Shown here: positions 17,551-31,845 of the stretch, piece after piece | Layout of the letters: every line of letters begins with the position of its first letter | Position numbering within the stretch: the first letter of the stretch is position 1 | From: Octopus bimaculoides | Lineage: Eukaryota | NCBI RefSeq assembly: GCF_001194135.2 | Contig: NC_068992.1 | Location: 144,165-208,164 of the forward strand | Reading direction: 5' to 3' | Length of the DNA: 64,000 nt | Position numbers and translations under genes: made by a program | Notes under the pieces: generated by a model | Told to the model about the DNA's origin: nothing | The model's input: the letters and a program-made list of their open reading frames with translations, nothing else | Databases searched by the model: none

Positions 17551-17720
17551 ACAGTTCTATATTTAAGAGATGAGGAATCATATACATTATTTACATTTGA
17601 TGGATGTTTGTCCTCATCTTGTTTGTTGTTAACACATCATTTCGGCTGATATACTCTCCAGCCTTCATCAGGTGTCTTGGGGAAATTTCAAACCTGGGTT
17701 CTCATTCCTAACATTTTCAA

Positions 17721-17753
<33 letters not shown>

Positions 17754-17846
17754 CATCATTATTATTCAGGTCACTGCCTGGAATCGAACTTGGAATCTTG
17801 GGGTTAGTAGCCCATGCTCTTAACCACTACGCCATATGCCCATGGG
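17551..17846 (-). mobile_element. tRNA-headed SINE-like element with hammerhead-bearing tail, copy 1 (full length)
   Basis: On the minus strand: A box TGGCGTAGTGG, B box GTTCGATTCC, (AAT)n, then GACAC-CTGATGA-AGGCTG..CAGCC-GAAAT-GAT-GTGTT. Confidence 0.85.
17631..17676 (-). ncRNA. Degenerate hammerhead ribozyme motif (family 1)
   Basis: CTGATGA, stem II GGCTG/CAGCC and GAAA are present, but the cleavage triplet reads GAT instead of GTT. Confidence 0.5.
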
Positions 17847-18860
17847 TATAATAATAATCTTTTCTTCAATAGGGACAAAGCCTGAAGTTTGATAGGGGAG
17901 AGGCTAGCTTGATTACATCAACCCCGCAATATTCAATCCGTACTTATTTCCCCAACCCCGAAAGGATGAAAGATAAAATAATGATAATTGCTAACATTAG
18001 AACCTAAGGCTTTAAATTTGTGAGGAGAGGTTATCTGATTAAAACAACCCAAGTATTGAAGAGTATTAATTTTATTGCCCCCTGGAAGGATGAAAAGCAA
18101 AGTCACCACTGGTAAAATCTGAACTCAGAACATAGAAGCAATTAACTAAATAGTGTAAGATGTTATAAGGCAATTTCTCCATAGTTCCAACGATTCTGTC
18201 ATTGATGCCTTTCAACAATAATTTCATTTCATGTAGATGCCAAAGGCTGCAAATTTTGGCAGAAGTTATAATTGGTTAATTAACCCTTGTGTGTGATTGG
18301 TACTTATTTATAAACTCTAATGATATGAAAGCAATGTAAAAGTCATCAGGTTTGGAAATATGAACAATTAAAGGAATTAATTAAATACAACAAGGCATTT
18401 GTTTAACACTATTGATTTTGCTATCTTGCACAGATTAAATATCACAGTGAGAACATTTAATTAGATTTGTATAAAGATAAAAGTACATAACTTAACTAGT
18501 AGCAGAGATTTGTTGTATTGTGCAGCTGTGCTTGTTACTGAAGTGTTAGGTAGTAACTAGAAAAGGGAAGAGGAAATCAAAGACAGGCAACAAGCAGAAG
18601 AACATGAAAACTGGGAAAATATGTAAAGGATATGAAATACATGTGTGAGTGAAAAGCTTTCCTCAAATATAAGTGTCAAATATATACATGCATTCATATA
18701 TGCATGTTTACACACACAGAGACACGTTTATAAATTTGTGTTGCAAGATTCCCGATGTGAAGTCGTGTGTTGAAACAAATGTTGTATTTCGGAATGGTCA
18801 TATTTTTGTTGCCAAATAAACACACACACACACAATATATATTTGTTCTTCACCTTTTAA

Positions 18861-19146
18861 TTACATTATTTACATTTGACAGATATTTGTTCTCATCGTG
18901 TTTGTTGTTAACCCCAAGATTCTGAGTTTGATTCCAGGCAGTGACCTGAATAATAATAATAACAATAATAACCTCAAAAAATACCTTAGGAATGTGAACC
19001 CATGTTTGAAATTTCCCCAAAGACCCTGATGAAGACTTGAGGGTACATCAGCCAAAACGTTGTGTTAACAACAAACAAGATGAGGACAAATATCTGTCAA
19101 ATGTAAATAATGTAGATAGTTCCTCATTTTTTAAGTATAGAACTGT
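18861..19146 (+). mobile_element. Same element, copy 2 (5'-truncated), preceded by an inverted duplicate of its own 3' tail
   Basis: 18909-19146 matches copy 1 on the + strand. 18861-18912 is the reverse complement of the tail, joined at GTTAAC. Confidence 0.85.
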
Positions 19147-19178
19147 TTATTACTGTTCTTATTCTAACTCATGTCTAT

Positions 19179-19224
19179 TGTCTGGGAGTCTTTCGTCATA
19201 CATCTGTGACCTCCTCAGCGACAC
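19179..19224 (-). ncRNA. Minimal type I hammerhead ribozyme motif (family 2)
   Basis: Reverse complement reads GTGTCG CTGAGGA G GTCA-cagatgta-TGAC GAAA GA CTC CCAGACA: core CUGANGA and GAAA, stem II, NUH triplet CUC, partial stem I. Confidence 0.6.
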
Positions 19225-19883
19225 TTTCTGTTTTTCTGTACGCTTTTGCTCTGATTAATCCGTTCTGCTCTTCTAAAAGAAGAGCAGAATGGAATGTTCT
19301 TCTAAAGAACAGAATAGAATGTTCTACAAGAACAGAATGGAATAAGCAGAGCAAGAGCACACATGAAGATGGAAAGTGCCACTGAAGAGGTCACAGATGT
19401 GTAATGAGAGATTTCCGGACAATGAACATGAATTACAATAAGGACAGTAATAAAAGAATGAAGAATGAATATTTAGTGCATGTGTTTATTTGGCGAAAAG
19501 TAAAAAAAATTACTGTCCCGAAATACAAATATATCTTTTTGGCTTGAATAAAACAAATTTTATTCTTTAACATAATGTGTAAACAGTTCTATTCCCATGT
19601 ATTGACATATATTAGTGTATAAAGATATTAGAAAGAAGATACCAGGTTTGGAAACTGAACCTAGAACCATCCCATCGGTGGCTGGCAAGATGCATTTCAA
19701 CCTGATTATGCCTTGTCAGTGCAATGTTTTCACAGCGTAGGACAATATTCATCTCCCACCAATATTCGTTGTATTTTTAAAGACAGCATGTATATAAAAA
19801 ATGTTTTATAATGAAATTCATGCAAAAAGAGGAAGTACTGTAACTATTTATGTAAATAAAATATTAAAATAATAACAACTTAC

Positions 19884-19927
19884 CAAATCCAACATTTGAC
19901 ACTCGAAGTCCAGATTTTCCTAGATTT
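19884..19927 (-). CDS. KCNAB2: Kv channel beta subunit exon: (R)NLGKSGLRVSNVGF(G)
   Basis: 44-nt exon, acceptor cttttattcttttcag, donor gtaagt, phase 2 to 1. Matches Kvbeta RNLGKSGLRVSCLGLG. Confidence 0.96.
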
Positions 19928-20019
19928 CTGAAAAGAATAAAAGCGTAGAATGTATATTTGGAATGAAAATATGTGTTAATGTTTGTATCAGTGTGTGTGT
20001 GCGTGTAAAAGTAGATTTG

Positions 20020-20420
20020 TAAGCTGACACTTTCTTTAGCTCTTGATAAAATTCCTCCCCATCATTGTCTTCACTAGCATTGGTGAGAGCATAGGAATGG
20101 ATGTGAGAGAGCATAGGACTGGGTGGCATTTACTGAGGGTTTAATGTTCTGAACTCCAATTTGTGAAGAAGAAGGTAATTGGCTGGAAATGATTTTTGAA
20201 GCACATTCTTTGCTTTTGAATGAATCCTATACCATCTGTTACTTTCACACCTTTTGCTTTTTCCAGTCTCGTGGTACATCCATCTGTCTATCTTACATTT
20301 ATTTCTTTCCATTGAAAGATCCATTCTAGGAATATAATTGTGAGAACACATCCAAAATGAAATAATTCCAGAATGGAGTGGAGTGAACGACATGATCACA
20401 GAATACAGAATGTAAGTTCT
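20020..20420 (-). mobile_element. RTE-type LINE apurinic endonuclease fragment
   Basis: IHSYALTNASEDNDGEEFYQEL resembles the APE YAPT..E.FY..L motif; disrupted. Confidence 0.6.
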
Positions 20421-30087: not shown

Positions 30088-30317
30088 TTAAATCTCTTGA
30101 TACCAATTTACCTGAGATCAGCCCCGGGTTCTGTAGTAAAAACTTCCTACTTAAAGAGATCTAAATTAAAACTGTCCATTAAAATTTCATGTTAATTTAT
30201 GTTCCAAACATCAGCCTAATTATGACAAAAGTTATTTTATTTAATTCTTTGTTACTTTCAAAATTATTTTAAACAAAAACAGTGTATTTCAAGAGAAATA
30301 TAAGAAAATGGTTAATA
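30088..30317. mobile_element. AT-rich MITE-like repeat bounded by TTAA
   Basis: TTAAATCTCTTGATACC ... AAGAAAATGGTTAA with weak terminal inversion; no second copy in the window. Confidence 0.35.
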
Positions 30318-30809
30318 TTTTACTGAGATTCAAATTTCATTTAGTAAAAAAGATAAAAGGAACAAGGTTTCATCCATTATGTCAGATTTGATATTTAAAG
30401 TAACAACTGGGTTTATAAATGATGGTAAAATTCACTGGAAATATTTAGTTGAAATAATAAGAAGGAAACAAATGTGAAAATGAATTCTGAGCTTGAGTCA
30501 TAAGAGATAGATTTTCTTATTACAATATATGGATACAAGTATGACTGGTTTGTCAGAACAGGTGCTTTTTAGGCAGTAAAACTCATCCAGAGTGCTGTAC
30601 TTGTGTTGTACAGTGTTGTACTTGTAGTCATATATTGTATGAATATACACACACACACTTACACACATACACACACACATACATACACATACATACACAT
30701 GCATACACACACATGTCTATTATGCTCATTATCGTTGCTTCAACATATTTTTCCAGAGTCAGACAAGATGTATGTATACAGAAATATACATGATATACCA
30801 CCATCATCA

Positions 30810-31020
30810 TCATCATTCTTTAATCTCCTCTGTTTTTCATGCTGGCATGGGTGGGTTCGTTTGACCAGAGCTGACAAGCAGGAGAGCTGTACCAGGTTCC
30901 AGTCTGATTTGGCATGTTTTCTACAGCTTGATGCCCTTCCTAATGCCAATTACTCTATGGTGTGTGCCAGATGCTTTTAATATATCACTGACATGAGCAC
31001 TTTTATGTGGCACCAGCACA
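30810..31020 (-). mobile_element. SINE family C
   Basis: Match to family C. Confidence 0.8.
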
Positions 31021-31295
31021 GGGCTCTTGCAACCGAGCCCTTTTCATTAGTAGGGAGTGGCATTAACACTTCTGCTGTGGAGGACGGGTCTTTTTGATGA
31101 GTGAAACCCAAAGGAGTAATAAAGGCCATACTTGAAAGATCAAGTTGATGACAGTAAGGGGATCTGGCTGTAATATACTGCTGTAGTAAAGCTTATTTGA
31201 CTCATGCCAGTATGAGAAAAAAAACACTAAACAAATAAACAAAAACGGTGATGATGATGATATTTTTATTTCCCTTGTTTAAATTCCATTGAACT

Positions 31296-31508
31296 TACAT
31301 AATTTACATTTGACAGATATTTGTCCTCATCTTGTTTGTTAACCCTCCAGCCTTCATCAGGTGTCTTGGGGGAAATTTCGAACCTGGATTCTCATTCCTA
31401 AGCTATTTTTCGTGTTGTTGTTATTATTATTATTCAGGTCACTGCCTGGAATCGAACTTGGAATCTTGGGGTTAGTAGCCTGTGCTCTTAACCACTACAC
31501 CGTATGCC
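31296..31508 (-). mobile_element. Same element, copy 3 (deletion in the ribozyme)
   Basis: Head and tail match copy 1; about 24 nt containing GAAAC are deleted after GTTAAC. Confidence 0.85.
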
Positions 31509-31569
31509 TGTAGTGGCTAAGATCGCAGGCTACTAACCCCAAGATTCTGAGTTCGATTCCAGGTAGTGA

Positions 31570-31607
<38 letters not shown>

Positions 31608-31622
31608 NNNNNNNNNNAGTGA

Positions 31623-31677
<55 letters not shown>

Positions 31678-31845
31678 GAAAAATACCTTAGGAATGAGAA
31701 TCCAGGTTCGAAATTTCCCCAATATACCTGATGAAGGCTGAAGGTTATATCAGCTGAAATGTTGTGTTAACAACAAACAAGATGAGAACAAATATCCGTC
31801 ATATGTAAATAATGTAAATAATTCCTCATCTCGCAAATATAGAAC
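31509..31845 (+). mobile_element. Same element, copy 4, head-to-head with copy 3
   Basis: GTAGTGGCTAAG..GTTCGATTCC head, (AAT)n split by a 9-N gap, tail with CTGATGAAGGCTG..CAGCTGAAATGTTGTGTT. Confidence 0.85.
31723..31768 (+). ncRNA. Minimal type I hammerhead ribozyme motif (best-preserved copy of family 1)
   Basis: TATAC CTGATGA A GGCTG-loop-CAGCT GAAA T GTT GTGTT. Core nucleotides are intact; stems I-III rely partly on G-U pairs. Confidence 0.6.

What the first reader, a model, noticed from the sequence alone, without database searches (positions are those of the whole stretch)
17551..31845. A tRNA-headed SINE whose tail is a Penelope-type hammerhead ribozyme (4 copies)
Seen: copies at 17551-17846(-), 18909-19146(+), 31296-31508(-) and 31509-31845(+) share a Pol III-like head (A box TGGCGTAGTGG, B box GTTCGATTCC), an (AAT)n linker and a ~170-nt tail. 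Taking the commonest or CpG-restored base from the copies, the tail contains GACAC-CUGAUGA-A-GGCUG(loop)CAGCC-GAAAC-GUU^GUGUU. That gives a catalytic core, stem II, stem I (GACAC/GUGUU) and a loopless palindromic stem III (AACGUU). Established: such minimal type I hammerheads typify Penelope-like element termini and are reported to cleave as dimers; Schistosoma Sm-alpha is a known SINE-like repeat with a hammerhead. Inference: this is a non-autonomous retroelement that pairs its own Pol III promoter with a PLE 3' end and is mobilised by a Penelope RT/GIY-YIG, rather than by a LINE as usual SINEs are. Most lesions in the copies fall on the CpGs of CCGAAACG, consistent with methylation decay of a once-intact ribozyme.
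Basis: partly seen in the sequence, partly recalled or inferred. Interest (0 to 1): 0.9.

Follow-up and report, generated by a model that had tools for sequence, protein, structure and literature searches.

The report
Octopus SINE carrying a Penelope-type hammerhead
A short mobile element in the Octopus bimaculoides genome joins a tRNA-like promoter head to a tail carrying the minimal hammerhead-ribozyme motif typical of Penelope-like retrotransposons, and its insertions are built like Penelope insertions, so it is probably a SINE copied by a Penelope enzyme and not by a LINE.

Summary
The window (Octopus bimaculoides CM046612.1, about 144165-208164) has the four reported copies plus a fifth inverted fragment (18861-18912). 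Together they make three insertion events.

Each copy is a tRNA-related head (A box at position 8, B box at 52), an (AAT)n linker and a ~170-nt tail. Simple majority across copies gives a complete minimal type I hammerhead. It shows the traits published for Penelope-like-element (PLE) hammerheads that my descriptor did not demand: an unpaired base after A9, G10.1-C11.1, and loopless palindromic 15.2-16.2.

Copy D still passes a strict descriptor and is the only hit in the window. About 0.0007 hits are expected per shuffled window.

New evidence is that two of the three insertions are inverted pairs. One pair is bounded by a single 11-bp target duplication. A ~32-nt terminal extension sits at one end only, and 5' truncation is common. 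These are published PLE insertion hallmarks.

Not shown: catalysis, covariation (only three sequences), or an autonomous PLE sharing the tail. No more octopus DNA could be reached. Rfam hammerhead models do not match, and tRNA identity rests on box positions only.

Verdict: a new variant of known kinds. PLE mobilisation is likely (about 0.6) but unproven.

The parts
17551..17846 (-). Copy A: full-length element (head, (AAT)n linker, 171-nt tail with 3' extension), sitting in an (ATT)n microsatellite
17767..17841 (-). Copy A tRNA-related head: A box TGGCGTAGTGG at position 8, B box AGTTCGATTCC at position 52
   Evidence: (tRNA model 8-63, 12.9 bits, E 2.1)
17722..17766 (-). Copy A (AAT)n linker
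17631..17676 (-). Copy A hammerhead motif: core, bulged A and helices I and II intact; 15.2 is U (CpG decay) and U16.1 is mutated to A. Predicted cleavage between 17636 and 17635
17551..17582 (-). Copy A 32-nt 3' extension (long-form end). It holds the 3' arm UCCUCAUCU of a 9-bp terminal hairpin whose 5' arm is at 17611-17619
18861..18912 (-). Fragment E (new): inverted 5'-truncated tail fragment from GTTAAC to ..AATGTAAT. It has a short-form 3' end and abuts the 5' end of B with TAAC microhomology
18909..19146 (+). Copy B: 5'-truncated inside the head (starts at ..TAACCCCAAG), with a long-form 3' end
19021..19066 (+). Copy B hammerhead remnant: keeps ACGU (15.1-16.1) and U17, but G12 is mutated to A, helix II has 2 mismatches and helix I has a 1-nt deletion
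31286..31296 (.). Left target-site duplication CCATTGAACTT of the C-D pair
31297..31508 (-). Copy C: inverted partner of D. Near-complete head, 20-24-nt internal deletion, short-form 3' end (no extension)
31342..31365 (-). Copy C 5' half of the hammerhead (GACAC-CUGAUGA-A-GGCUGG..). The 3' half is deleted up to ..TAAC
31509..31846 (+). Copy D: 5'-truncated by about 12 nt and joined head-to-head to C without a gap. It has a long-form 3' end
31608..31617 (.). Assembly gap inside D's (AAT)n linker, flanked by identical 43-nt stretches (31565-31607 = 31618-31660). It is a likely unmerged overlap
31724..31767 (+). Copy D hammerhead: the only sequence in the window that passes the strict minimal-hammerhead descriptor. 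Helix I is 4 bp, helix II is 6 bp, 10.1-11.1 is G.U, and the 15.1-16.1 segment is AUGU. Predicted cleavage between 31763 and 31764
31817..31846 (+). Copy D 30-nt 3' extension (long-form end)
31847..31857 (.). Right target-site duplication CCATTGAACTT of the C-D pair

Best explanation
This is a family of non-autonomous retroposons in Octopus bimaculoides with three modules:
1. A ~75-nt tRNA-related head carrying an internal Pol III promoter (A and B boxes).
2. An (AAT)n linker.
3. A ~170-nt tail that descends from the 3' region (pseudo-LTR) of a Penelope-like element (PLE).

The tail contains a 46-nt minimal type I hammerhead, an A-rich spacer and a 9-bp terminal hairpin.

Proposed mechanism:
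- Pol III starts at the head and reads through the element. The consensus sense strand has no T4 terminator.
- The PLE-type tail is recognised by the RT/GIY-YIG protein of an autonomous PLE.
- That protein copies the RNA into the genome by target-primed reverse transcription.
- This leaves the PLE-style footprints: 5' truncation, an inverted second copy at the 5' side inside one target duplication, and a ~32-nt extension at one end only.

The hammerhead has no helix III of its own (ACGU with no loop). As a monomer it should be inactive and leave the SINE RNA intact. It could act only when two RNAs pair through ACGU and swap helix I. Its role is as unknown as it is in PLEs themselves; candidates are processing, dimerisation or RT recognition.

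Shown here: the anatomy, the non-random motif, the single-event inverted pair, and the two classes of 3' end.
Inferred: Pol III transcription, PLE origin of the tail, the PLE partner, and any cleavage.
For: Copies and modular anatomy.

Head:
- A box at position 8 and B box at position 52, the canonical tRNA positions.
- No T>=4 on the sense strand of A, C and D.
- The only Rfam hit on the head is tRNA, in register 8-63.

Orientation as a retroposon:
- B, D and E are 5'-truncated with intact 3' ends.
- The C-D pair is flanked by an 11-bp TSD.

Hammerhead:
- CUGAUGA+A is invariant in 4 of 4 copies.
- The majority consensus is a complete minimal hammerhead.
- Copy D is the only strict-descriptor hit in the window, against 3 hits in 4300 shuffled windows.
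- The MFE and centroid fold of the consensus form helices I and II.
- 87.9% of helix cells pair, against 25-45% in slid registers.
- The motif has the traits listed by Cervera & de la Pena 2014 that were not built into their descriptor. These are a base between 9 and 10.1, G10.1-C11.1 and palindromic 15.2-16.2. It also has a short helix I and a long helix II.

Lesions are largely CpG transitions.

PLE-like insertion architecture. [quoted passage not shown] Here:
- E-B and C-D are such inverted pairs (2 of 3 insertions).
- In both pairs the inverted copy ends at the short site ..AATGTAA and the direct copy carries the 30-32-nt extension.

Background: PLEs are abundant and recently active in Octopus genomes.
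Against: - Only three insertion events and three sequences cover the whole motif. There are no compensatory changes.
- No copy is fully canonical. D has G.U at 10.1-11.1 and U.G at 15.2-16.2. A, B and C carry inactivating lesions.
- Rfam hammerhead families do not match, even in a 91-nt search at E<=10.
- ARAGORN finds no tRNA, even on the CpG-restored head.
- There is no RT or GIY-YIG in the window, and no PLE with this tail could be sought.
- Observed copies start at the head and end 53-85 nt past the predicted cleavage site. Cleavage is therefore not what defines the unit, and cleavage of a monomer transcript would cut the promoter from the 3' end.
- Copy A, and perhaps B in degenerate form, is followed by (ATT)n. 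That could be a microsatellite-type LINE/SINE tail and not a target.
- E-B has no clear TSD.
- From my own knowledge, Dong/R4-clade LINEs are associated with TAA repeats. They are the most active LINEs reported in O. vulgaris.
Confidence: 0.62

Rival explanations
1. This is a conventional LINE-dependent tRNA SINE. The tail is the 3' end of an octopus LINE (for example Dong/R4, RTE or CR1), and the hammerhead-like string is a coincidence of a 7-mer, a 4-mer and two short stems.
For: - Rfam hammerhead models give no hit.
- There is no covariation.
- Most copies carry core or helix lesions.
- Copy A is followed by a long (ATT)n run and the element has an internal (AAT)n. Microsatellite tails are common in LINE/SINE pairs (own knowledge).
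- LINEs of several clades are abundant in Octopus.
Against: - The strict descriptor is expected about 0.0007 times per window. That scales to about 2e-6 per 300-nt family consensus.
- The motif also shows published PLE-hammerhead traits that the descriptor did not demand.
- The lesions are what CpG decay predicts.
- Two of three insertions are inverted pairs with full overlap of the two copies. L1-type twin priming on one RNA does not produce that (own knowledge).
- Nothing else in the window resembles the tail, including the region after the LINE-like ORF at 36485-36967.
Confidence: 0.17
2. The hammerhead module is really PLE-derived but is a passenger. A PLE fragment landed in the (AAT)n tail of a tRNA SINE, and the composite is copied by a LINE that recognises only the terminal hairpin or last nucleotides, or by relaxed recognition.
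For: - The modular build has a microsatellite joint.
- PLEs prefer microsatellite targets.
- There is a 9-bp terminal hairpin of the kind stringent LINE/SINE pairs use (own knowledge for the comparison).
Against: - The insertion footprints themselves are PLE-like, not LINE-like. These are the inverted adjacent copy, the one-sided 30-32-nt extension and the absence of an A-rich or repeat tail in D.
- The hairpin's fold z-scores are weak, from -0.5 to -1.9.
Confidence: 0.13
3. This is a retrozyme-like element. Tandem or dimeric transcripts are cut by the hammerhead, ligated into small circles and reverse-transcribed by rolling circle.
For: - Metazoan non-LTR retrozymes carry type I hammerheads and are proposed PLE dependants.
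- The breakpoints of E and of C's deletion lie 2-6 nt past the predicted cleavage site.
Against: - There are no head-to-tail tandem copies in the window.
- Copies begin at the head and end at fixed 3' sites, not at the cleavage site.
- The E-B junction coincides with an 11/16 microhomology between the tail and the antisense head, which by itself can explain the breakpoint.
- Retrozymes are described as lacking promoters.
Confidence: 0.05
4. The inverted pairs are short-read assembly artefacts and the family is an ordinary SINE.
For: - The assembly has 14 gaps in this window.
- PLE-like inverted structures are known to trouble short-read assemblies.
Against: - Neither junction (18912/18909, 31508/31509) is at a gap.
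- The C-D pair is bracketed by a perfect 11-bp TSD. A chimeric join would not create that.
Confidence: 0.03

Closest known systems
Minimal type I hammerheads of Penelope-like elements (Cervera & de la Pena 2014; Lunse et al. 2017)
   Same: - CUGAUGA...GAAA core.
- Unpaired base between 9 and 10.1.
- G10.1-C11.1.
- No helix III loop, with palindromic 15.2-16.2 (ACGU).
- Short helix I (5 bp) and longer helix II (6 bp).
- Predicted to work only as a dimer.
- Occurs as dispersed single motifs.
   Different: Here the motif is not in a pseudo-LTR next to an RT/GIY-YIG ORF. It sits inside a ~300-nt element that begins with a Pol III tRNA-type promoter. Dispersed orphan motifs were previously read as truncated PLEs.
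Schistosoma Sm-alpha / Sj-alpha SINE-like elements
   Same: A short non-coding retroposon combining a Pol III promoter with a type I hammerhead (review PMC6765202).
   Different: - Sm-alpha has a canonical hammerhead with loop-loop contacts and a helix III that cleaves efficiently.
- It is largely tandem or satellite-like.
- Its promoter lies downstream of the cleavage site.
- The octopus element has the PLE minimal variant, dispersed copies and a promoter upstream of the ribozyme.
Metazoan non-LTR retrozymes
   Same: Non-autonomous, hammerhead-bearing, and proposed to depend on PLEs. Their sequence is related to PLE pseudo-LTRs in Xenopus (2026 preprint).
   Different: Retrozymes are head-to-tail tandem repeats, give circRNAs, carry canonical type I hammerheads and are described as lacking a promoter. 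None of these holds for the copies here.
Conventional tRNA-derived SINEs (SINE2), including the octopus tRNA-Core/tRNA-Deu families
   Same: tRNA-related head with A and B boxes, ~300 nt, 5' truncation, TSDs and high copy dispersal. Octopus genomes are SINE-rich.
   Different: The 3' module carries a PLE-type ribozyme in place of a recognisable LINE tail. There is no A-rich or short-repeat end in D. The insertions have PLE-type inverted pairs and a one-sided extension.

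Membership tests
tRNA-derived SINE (SINE2) | Internal Pol III promoter: A box and B box at tRNA spacing | tested here: met
   TGGCGTAGTGG at position 8 and AGTTCGATTCC at position 52 from GGGCATA. 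The Rfam tRNA alignment is in register 8-63.
tRNA-derived SINE (SINE2) | Head recognisable as a tRNA (cloverleaf or model score) | tested here: inconclusive
   Rfam tRNA scores 12.9 bits against a gathering score of 29, E 2.1 in an 86-nt search. ARAGORN finds nothing in the window or on the CpG-restored head.
tRNA-derived SINE (SINE2) | Short, non-coding, dispersed copies with 5' truncation and target-site duplication | tested here: met
   Copies are 212-338 nt. B, D and E are 5'-truncated. There is an 11-bp TSD around C-D and ATTATTATT around A.
tRNA-derived SINE (SINE2) | 3' region shared with an autonomous partner retrotransposon | not testable with these tools
   No other octopus DNA could be fetched. 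There is no match to the tail elsewhere in the window.
Hammerhead ribozyme, canonical Rfam families (type I/III, HH9, HH10, II) | Match to a curated covariance model | tested here: not met
   No hammerhead family at gathering score or at E<=10, even on 91 nt around copy D.
Hammerhead ribozyme, canonical Rfam families (type I/III, HH9, HH10, II) | Conserved core C3-A9, G12-A14, A15.1-U16.1, H17 | tested here: met
   Present in the majority consensus and in copy D. CUGAUGA is invariant in 4 of 4 copies. GAAA is present in A and D, and U16.1-U17 in B and D.
Hammerhead ribozyme, canonical Rfam families (type I/III, HH9, HH10, II) | Intramolecular helix III closed by a loop | tested here: not met
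   A15.1-C-G-U16.1 has no loop nucleotides, so it can pair only between two molecules.
Hammerhead ribozyme, canonical Rfam families (type I/III, HH9, HH10, II) | Self-cleavage | not testable with these tools
   Needs in vitro transcription of monomer and dimer RNA.
PLE minimal hammerhead (min-HHR) | Unpaired nucleotide between A9 and G10.1 | tested here: met
   An A is present in all four copies. The trait is listed in PMC4209133.
PLE minimal hammerhead (min-HHR) | G10.1-C11.1, helix II longer than usual, helix I 4-5 bp | tested here: met
   GGCUGG/UCAGCC gives 6 bp and GACAC/GUGUU gives 5 bp. G-C at 10.1-11.1 is present in A and B, and G.U in D.
PLE minimal hammerhead (min-HHR) | Palindromic 15.2-16.2 with little or no loop 3 | tested here: met
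   C-G is kept in B. U-G in A and D is CpG decay. The restored segment is ACGU.
PLE minimal hammerhead (min-HHR) | Compensatory changes within family alignments | tested here: inconclusive
   With 3 full sequences there are 0 double changes, 5 one-sided standard-pair variants and 4 unpaired cells. The test has no power.
PLE minimal hammerhead (min-HHR) | Location in the pseudo-LTR of an element encoding RT and GIY-YIG | not testable with these tools
   There is no RT or GIY-YIG signature in the window. The genome-wide search was not possible.
PLE-type insertion (mechanistic footprint) | [quoted passage not shown] | tested here: met
   E abuts B and C abuts D. C-D lies inside one 11-bp TSD. The hallmark is from PMC8557442.
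PLE-type insertion (mechanistic footprint) | [quoted passage not shown] | tested here: met
   A 30-32-nt extension is present on B, D and A and absent from the inverted partners E and C.
PLE-type insertion (mechanistic footprint) | Partial head-to-tail tandems forming pseudo-LTRs | tested here: not met
   There is no direct tandem of this element in the window.
Metazoan non-LTR retrozyme | Head-to-tail tandem repeats, each with a canonical type I hammerhead, giving circRNA | tested here: not met
   There are no tandems, and the hammerhead is the minimal variant. circRNA is not testable.

The most novel reading that the evidence does not exclude
This would be the first clear case of a true SINE, with its own Pol III tRNA-type promoter, whose partner is a Penelope-like element and not a LINE.

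By extension, part of the thousands of 'orphan' dispersed minimal hammerheads in animal genomes would be Pol III-driven PLE-dependent SINEs and not dead PLE fragments.

A further step is that the loopless palindromic helix III makes two SINE RNAs pair. This RNA dimer would be what is integrated, giving the inverted two-copy insertions inside one target duplication.
Probability: 0.3. Interest if true: 0.75.

Novelty: new variant of a known kind. Interest (0 to 1): 0.6.

Why it matters
SINEs are defined as parasites of LINEs. PLEs form a separate, poorly understood retroelement class whose hammerheads have no known role.

A SINE that borrows a PLE 3' end would do three things:
- extend the SINE concept to a third RT lineage;
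- give a compact ~300-nt natural substrate for finding what a PLE RT/GIY-YIG recognises and what the minimal hammerhead does;
- offer an explanation for the many dispersed orphan minimal hammerheads in animal genomes.

It also bears on octopus genome biology, where SINEs are the largest repeat class and most families are unclassified.

Tried and rejected
Searches for more copies (all failed):
- Exact DNA patterns from head, tail and hammerhead in the metagenome, prokaryote-genome and viral collections gave 0 hits.
- Homologues of the LINE-like ORF 36485-36967 are <=62% identical. Locus L001 shares no DNA with the window.
- The hAT-like ORF identified the species.
  - Its locus L002 is the window itself.
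  - The only other O. bimaculoides gene found is >100 kb and came back without DNA.
  - The ENA loci L003-L006 are not octopus.
- The exhaustive representative search gave no identifiable octopus paralogue.

Literature. There were no hits for sequence strings. No paper describing a tRNA SINE with a PLE hammerhead or a PLE-mobilised SINE was found. Lunse 2017 and Ferbeyre 1998 are not held.

Ideas considered and rejected or down-weighted:
- The tail is an independent element on the opposite strand ending in (ATT)n. Rejected because truncations remove the head side and 3' ends are fixed.
- Breakpoints of E and of C's deletion near the predicted cleavage site as evidence of in vivo cleavage. Down-weighted because of microhomology at both junctions.
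- A relaxed descriptor gave one extra weak hit at 6510-6539, with a 3-bp helix II and a non-palindromic segment. I judged it chance.
- RNAcofold of two 46-mers only gives the trivial extended duplex and is uninformative.

Full report
**Where the window is**

A hAT/FAM200-like ORF at 21190-21639 is 100% identical to XP_052827992.1 of Octopus bimaculoides. The locus fetched for that protein, CM046612.1:145838-175803 of GCA_001194135.2, equals window 1674-31639 at 100% identity. The window is therefore O. bimaculoides chromosome CM046612.1, about 144165-208164. It lies inside a long aldo-keto-reductase gene model on the minus strand. Octopus genomes are SINE-rich and contain recently active Penelope-like elements (PLEs).

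**The gap, tested first**

The 43 nt left of the gap (31565-31607) and the 43 nt right of it (31618-31660) are identical: AGTGACCTG followed by (AAT)n. The right-hand piece thus starts in the last 9 nt of the head and continues through linker and tail. The left-hand piece runs from the head into the linker. The gap is best read as an unmerged contig overlap inside a microsatellite. Copy D is one element, and only its linker length is uncertain.

**The observation**

Self-blastn, MAFFT and nhmmer with head and tail profiles recover these pieces and nothing else in the 64 kb:
- A: 17551-17846(-).
- B: 18909-19146(+).
- C: 31297-31508(-).
- D: 31509-31846(+).
- E: 18861-18912(-). This fifth piece was not in the finding. 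It is an inverted tail fragment that abuts the 5' end of B.

Identities are 85-94%.

The element has three modules:
- A ~75-nt head, with TGGCGTAGTGG at position 8 and AGTTCGATTCC at position 52 counted from GGGCATA. These are the canonical tRNA positions of the A and B boxes.
- An (AAT)n linker of variable length.
- A ~171-nt tail.

The only Rfam family that touches the head is tRNA, aligned in register (model 8-63). The score is only 12.9 bits, E 2.1. ARAGORN finds no tRNA in the window or on a CpG-restored head. 'tRNA-related head' is therefore a fair description, but a specific parent tRNA is not shown. The sense strand of A, C and D has no run of four T, as a Pol III unit requires.

**The hammerhead**

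CUGAUGA and the following A are identical in all four copies. Simple majority of A, B, D (and C for the 5' half) gives GACAC-CUGAUGA-A-GGCUGG-(AGGGUAUA)-UCAGCC-GAAA-U-G-U-U^GUGUU.

The restoration is justified. 22 of the 60 substitutions among the copies are CpG transitions at only 10 CpG sites. The window has CpG o/e 0.46 against GpC 0.96.

State of the motif in each copy:
- D is complete, with wobble pairs at 10.1-11.1 and 15.2-16.2.
- In A, U16.1 is mutated to A.
- B has G12 mutated to A, two helix II mismatches and a broken helix I.
- C has lost the 3' half through a 20-24-nt deletion.

I wrote a strict descriptor with these requirements:
- helix I of at least 4 bp;
- CUGANGA;
- 0-1 bulged base;
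- helix II of at least 4 bp;
- GAAA;
- a segment from A15.1 to U16.1 that can pair with itself;
- H17.

The descriptor hits the real window once on both strands, at copy D. It hit 1 time in 300 and 2 times in 4000 dinucleotide-preserving shuffles. That is about 0.0007 per window, or roughly 2e-6 per 300-nt repeat consensus.

The minimum-free-energy and centroid folds of the consensus form helices I and II. On the alignment, 87.9% of helix cells pair, against 25-45% when the partner is slid by 1-3 columns. There are no double (compensatory) changes, and with three sequences there is no power to see them. Rfam's hammerhead families do not match even in a 91-nt search at E<=10. That is expected for a motif with no helix III loop, but it remains a negative result.

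**Why it is the Penelope kind**

Cervera & de la Pena 2014 (PMC4209133) list features that emerged in PLE minimal hammerheads without being part of their search descriptor:
- G10.1-C11.1;
- palindromic 15.2-16.2, with loop 3 absent or palindromic.

They also describe a short helix I (4-5 bp) and a long helix II. The octopus consensus has all of these. With ACGU and no loop, helix III can form only between two RNAs. This is the dimer model proposed for PLE motifs.

**New evidence: the insertions look like PLE insertions**

The five pieces are three insertion events.

C and D are joined head-to-head with no gap at the junction. Together they are bracketed by a perfect 11-bp duplication, CCATTGAACTT (31286-31296 and 31847-31857), so they entered in one event. 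E and B are likewise joined in inverted orientation.

In both pairs the two copies overlap in content, so this is not the split of one RNA seen in L1 twin priming (own knowledge).

In both pairs the inverted copy ends at a short site (..AAUGUAA). The direct copy carries a further 30-32 nt (AUAAUUCCUCAUCUCUUAAAUAUAGAAC..), as does the single copy A.

B, D and E are 5'-truncated.

Craig et al. 2021 (PMC8557442) describe exactly these hallmarks for PLEs:
- high 5' truncation;
- a 30-40-bp extension often present at only one end;
- a bias for microsatellite targets.

Copy A sits in an (ATT)n run, with ATTATTATT on both sides. One PLE hallmark is not seen: there are no head-to-tail partial tandems in the window.

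**Other anatomy**

After the hammerhead come an A-rich spacer and a 9-bp hairpin, AGAUGAGGA/UCCUCAUCU. The hairpin's 3' arm lies in the extension, and the short-form ends fall in its loop. It is predicted in A, B, D and the consensus, but the fold z-scores are weak, from -0.5 to -1.9.

The 5' end of E and the right edge of C's deletion both lie 2-6 nt past the predicted cleavage site. This is suggestive of a cleaved template. However, both junctions have microhomology. At E-B there is an 11/16 match between the tail (GAAACGTTGTGTTAAC) and the antisense head. I therefore give this observation little weight.

**Most likely mechanism**

- Pol III transcribes from the head through the tail.
- The tail, derived from a PLE 3' region, recruits a PLE RT/GIY-YIG protein.
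- Target-primed reverse transcription gives the footprints above.

The hammerhead should be silent in a single RNA and could act only in an RNA dimer. What it does is unknown here, as it is in PLEs.

Observed copies begin at the head and end 53-85 nt beyond the cleavage site. Cleavage therefore does not define the unit, and cleavage of a monomer transcript would be self-defeating.

Confidence: about 0.9 that the motif is a real PLE-type hammerhead descendant, and about 0.6 for the whole statement including PLE mobilisation.

**Rivals**

- A LINE-dependent SINE with a chance motif (0.17).
- A real PLE fragment carried as a passenger by a LINE-dependent SINE (0.13).
- A retrozyme-like circle-forming element (0.05).
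- An assembly artefact (0.03).

The first two cannot be excluded without the genome. The (ATT)n after A, the internal (AAT)n and the abundance of Dong/R4 LINEs in Octopus keep them alive. Dong/R4 LINEs are TAA-repeat associated by my own knowledge.

**Comparison with what is known, and novelty**

Three things are known:
- SINE-like Pol III elements with a canonical hammerhead, Sm-alpha and Sj-alpha.
- PLE minimal hammerheads, mostly found as dispersed orphan motifs and read as truncated PLEs.
- Non-LTR retrozymes as PLE-derived, promoter-less tandem elements.

I found no paper describing a tRNA-headed SINE with a PLE minimal hammerhead, or any SINE assigned to a PLE partner. Repbase and Dfam could not be consulted, so prior curation is possible. 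I rate it a new variant of known kinds.

**What could not be done**

Every route to more octopus DNA failed. The genome-wide consensus, the covariation test and the search for an autonomous PLE sharing the tail remain the decisive open steps.

Noticed in passing
window 57749-57855 (+): A full-length U6 snRNA match (85.9 bits, E 1.8e-20, model 1-105). Whether it is a gene or a retropseudogene was not examined.
   Followed up: no
window 21190-22026 (+): A hAT/FAM200-ZBED5-like ORF, annotated as O. bimaculoides LOC128249175 (XP_052827992.1). An in-frame stop at 21637-21639 is followed by 124 more codons of the same frame, so it looks like a decaying domesticated or transposon gene. It served to identify species and chromosome.
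   Followed up: partly
window 17400-17492 (-), 17860-17990, 18000-18220: Copies of a different, very abundant octopus SINE (head ..GGCAGAATCGTTAGCA.., body ..CCCCGAAAGGATGAAAG..) flank and separate copies A and B. The region is a SINE cluster.
   Followed up: no
window 17568-17619 (-), 19078-19129 (+), 31780-31831 (+): A 9-bp terminal hairpin AGAUGAGGA/UCCUCAUCU in the SINE tail. The short-form 3' ends of C and E fall in its loop. Fold z-scores are only -0.5 to -1.9.
   Followed up: partly
window 18909-18922 and 31338-31345: The 5' end of fragment E and the right edge of the deletion in C both map 2-6 nt downstream of the predicted hammerhead cleavage site (at GTTAAC). Both junctions also show microhomology, so the cause is open.
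   Followed up: partly
window 36485-36967 (+): A 160-aa ORF resembling the C-terminal end of a LINE-type protein. Its best database relatives are <=62% identical and come from non-octopus samples. Its downstream region shows no similarity to the SINE tail.
   Followed up: partly
window 3413-4341 (-): Two overlapping ORFs with a weak HTH_23/DUF7769 match, probably a decayed Tc1/mariner-type transposase.
   Followed up: no
whole window: There are 14 assembly gaps (3106 N), mostly next to microsatellites or low-complexity runs. CpG o/e is 0.46 against GpC 0.96, indicating methylation-type CpG depletion.
   Followed up: partly
window 6510-6539 (+): The single extra hit of a relaxed hammerhead descriptor (3-bp helix II, non-palindromic helix III segment). 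It was judged chance.
   Followed up: no
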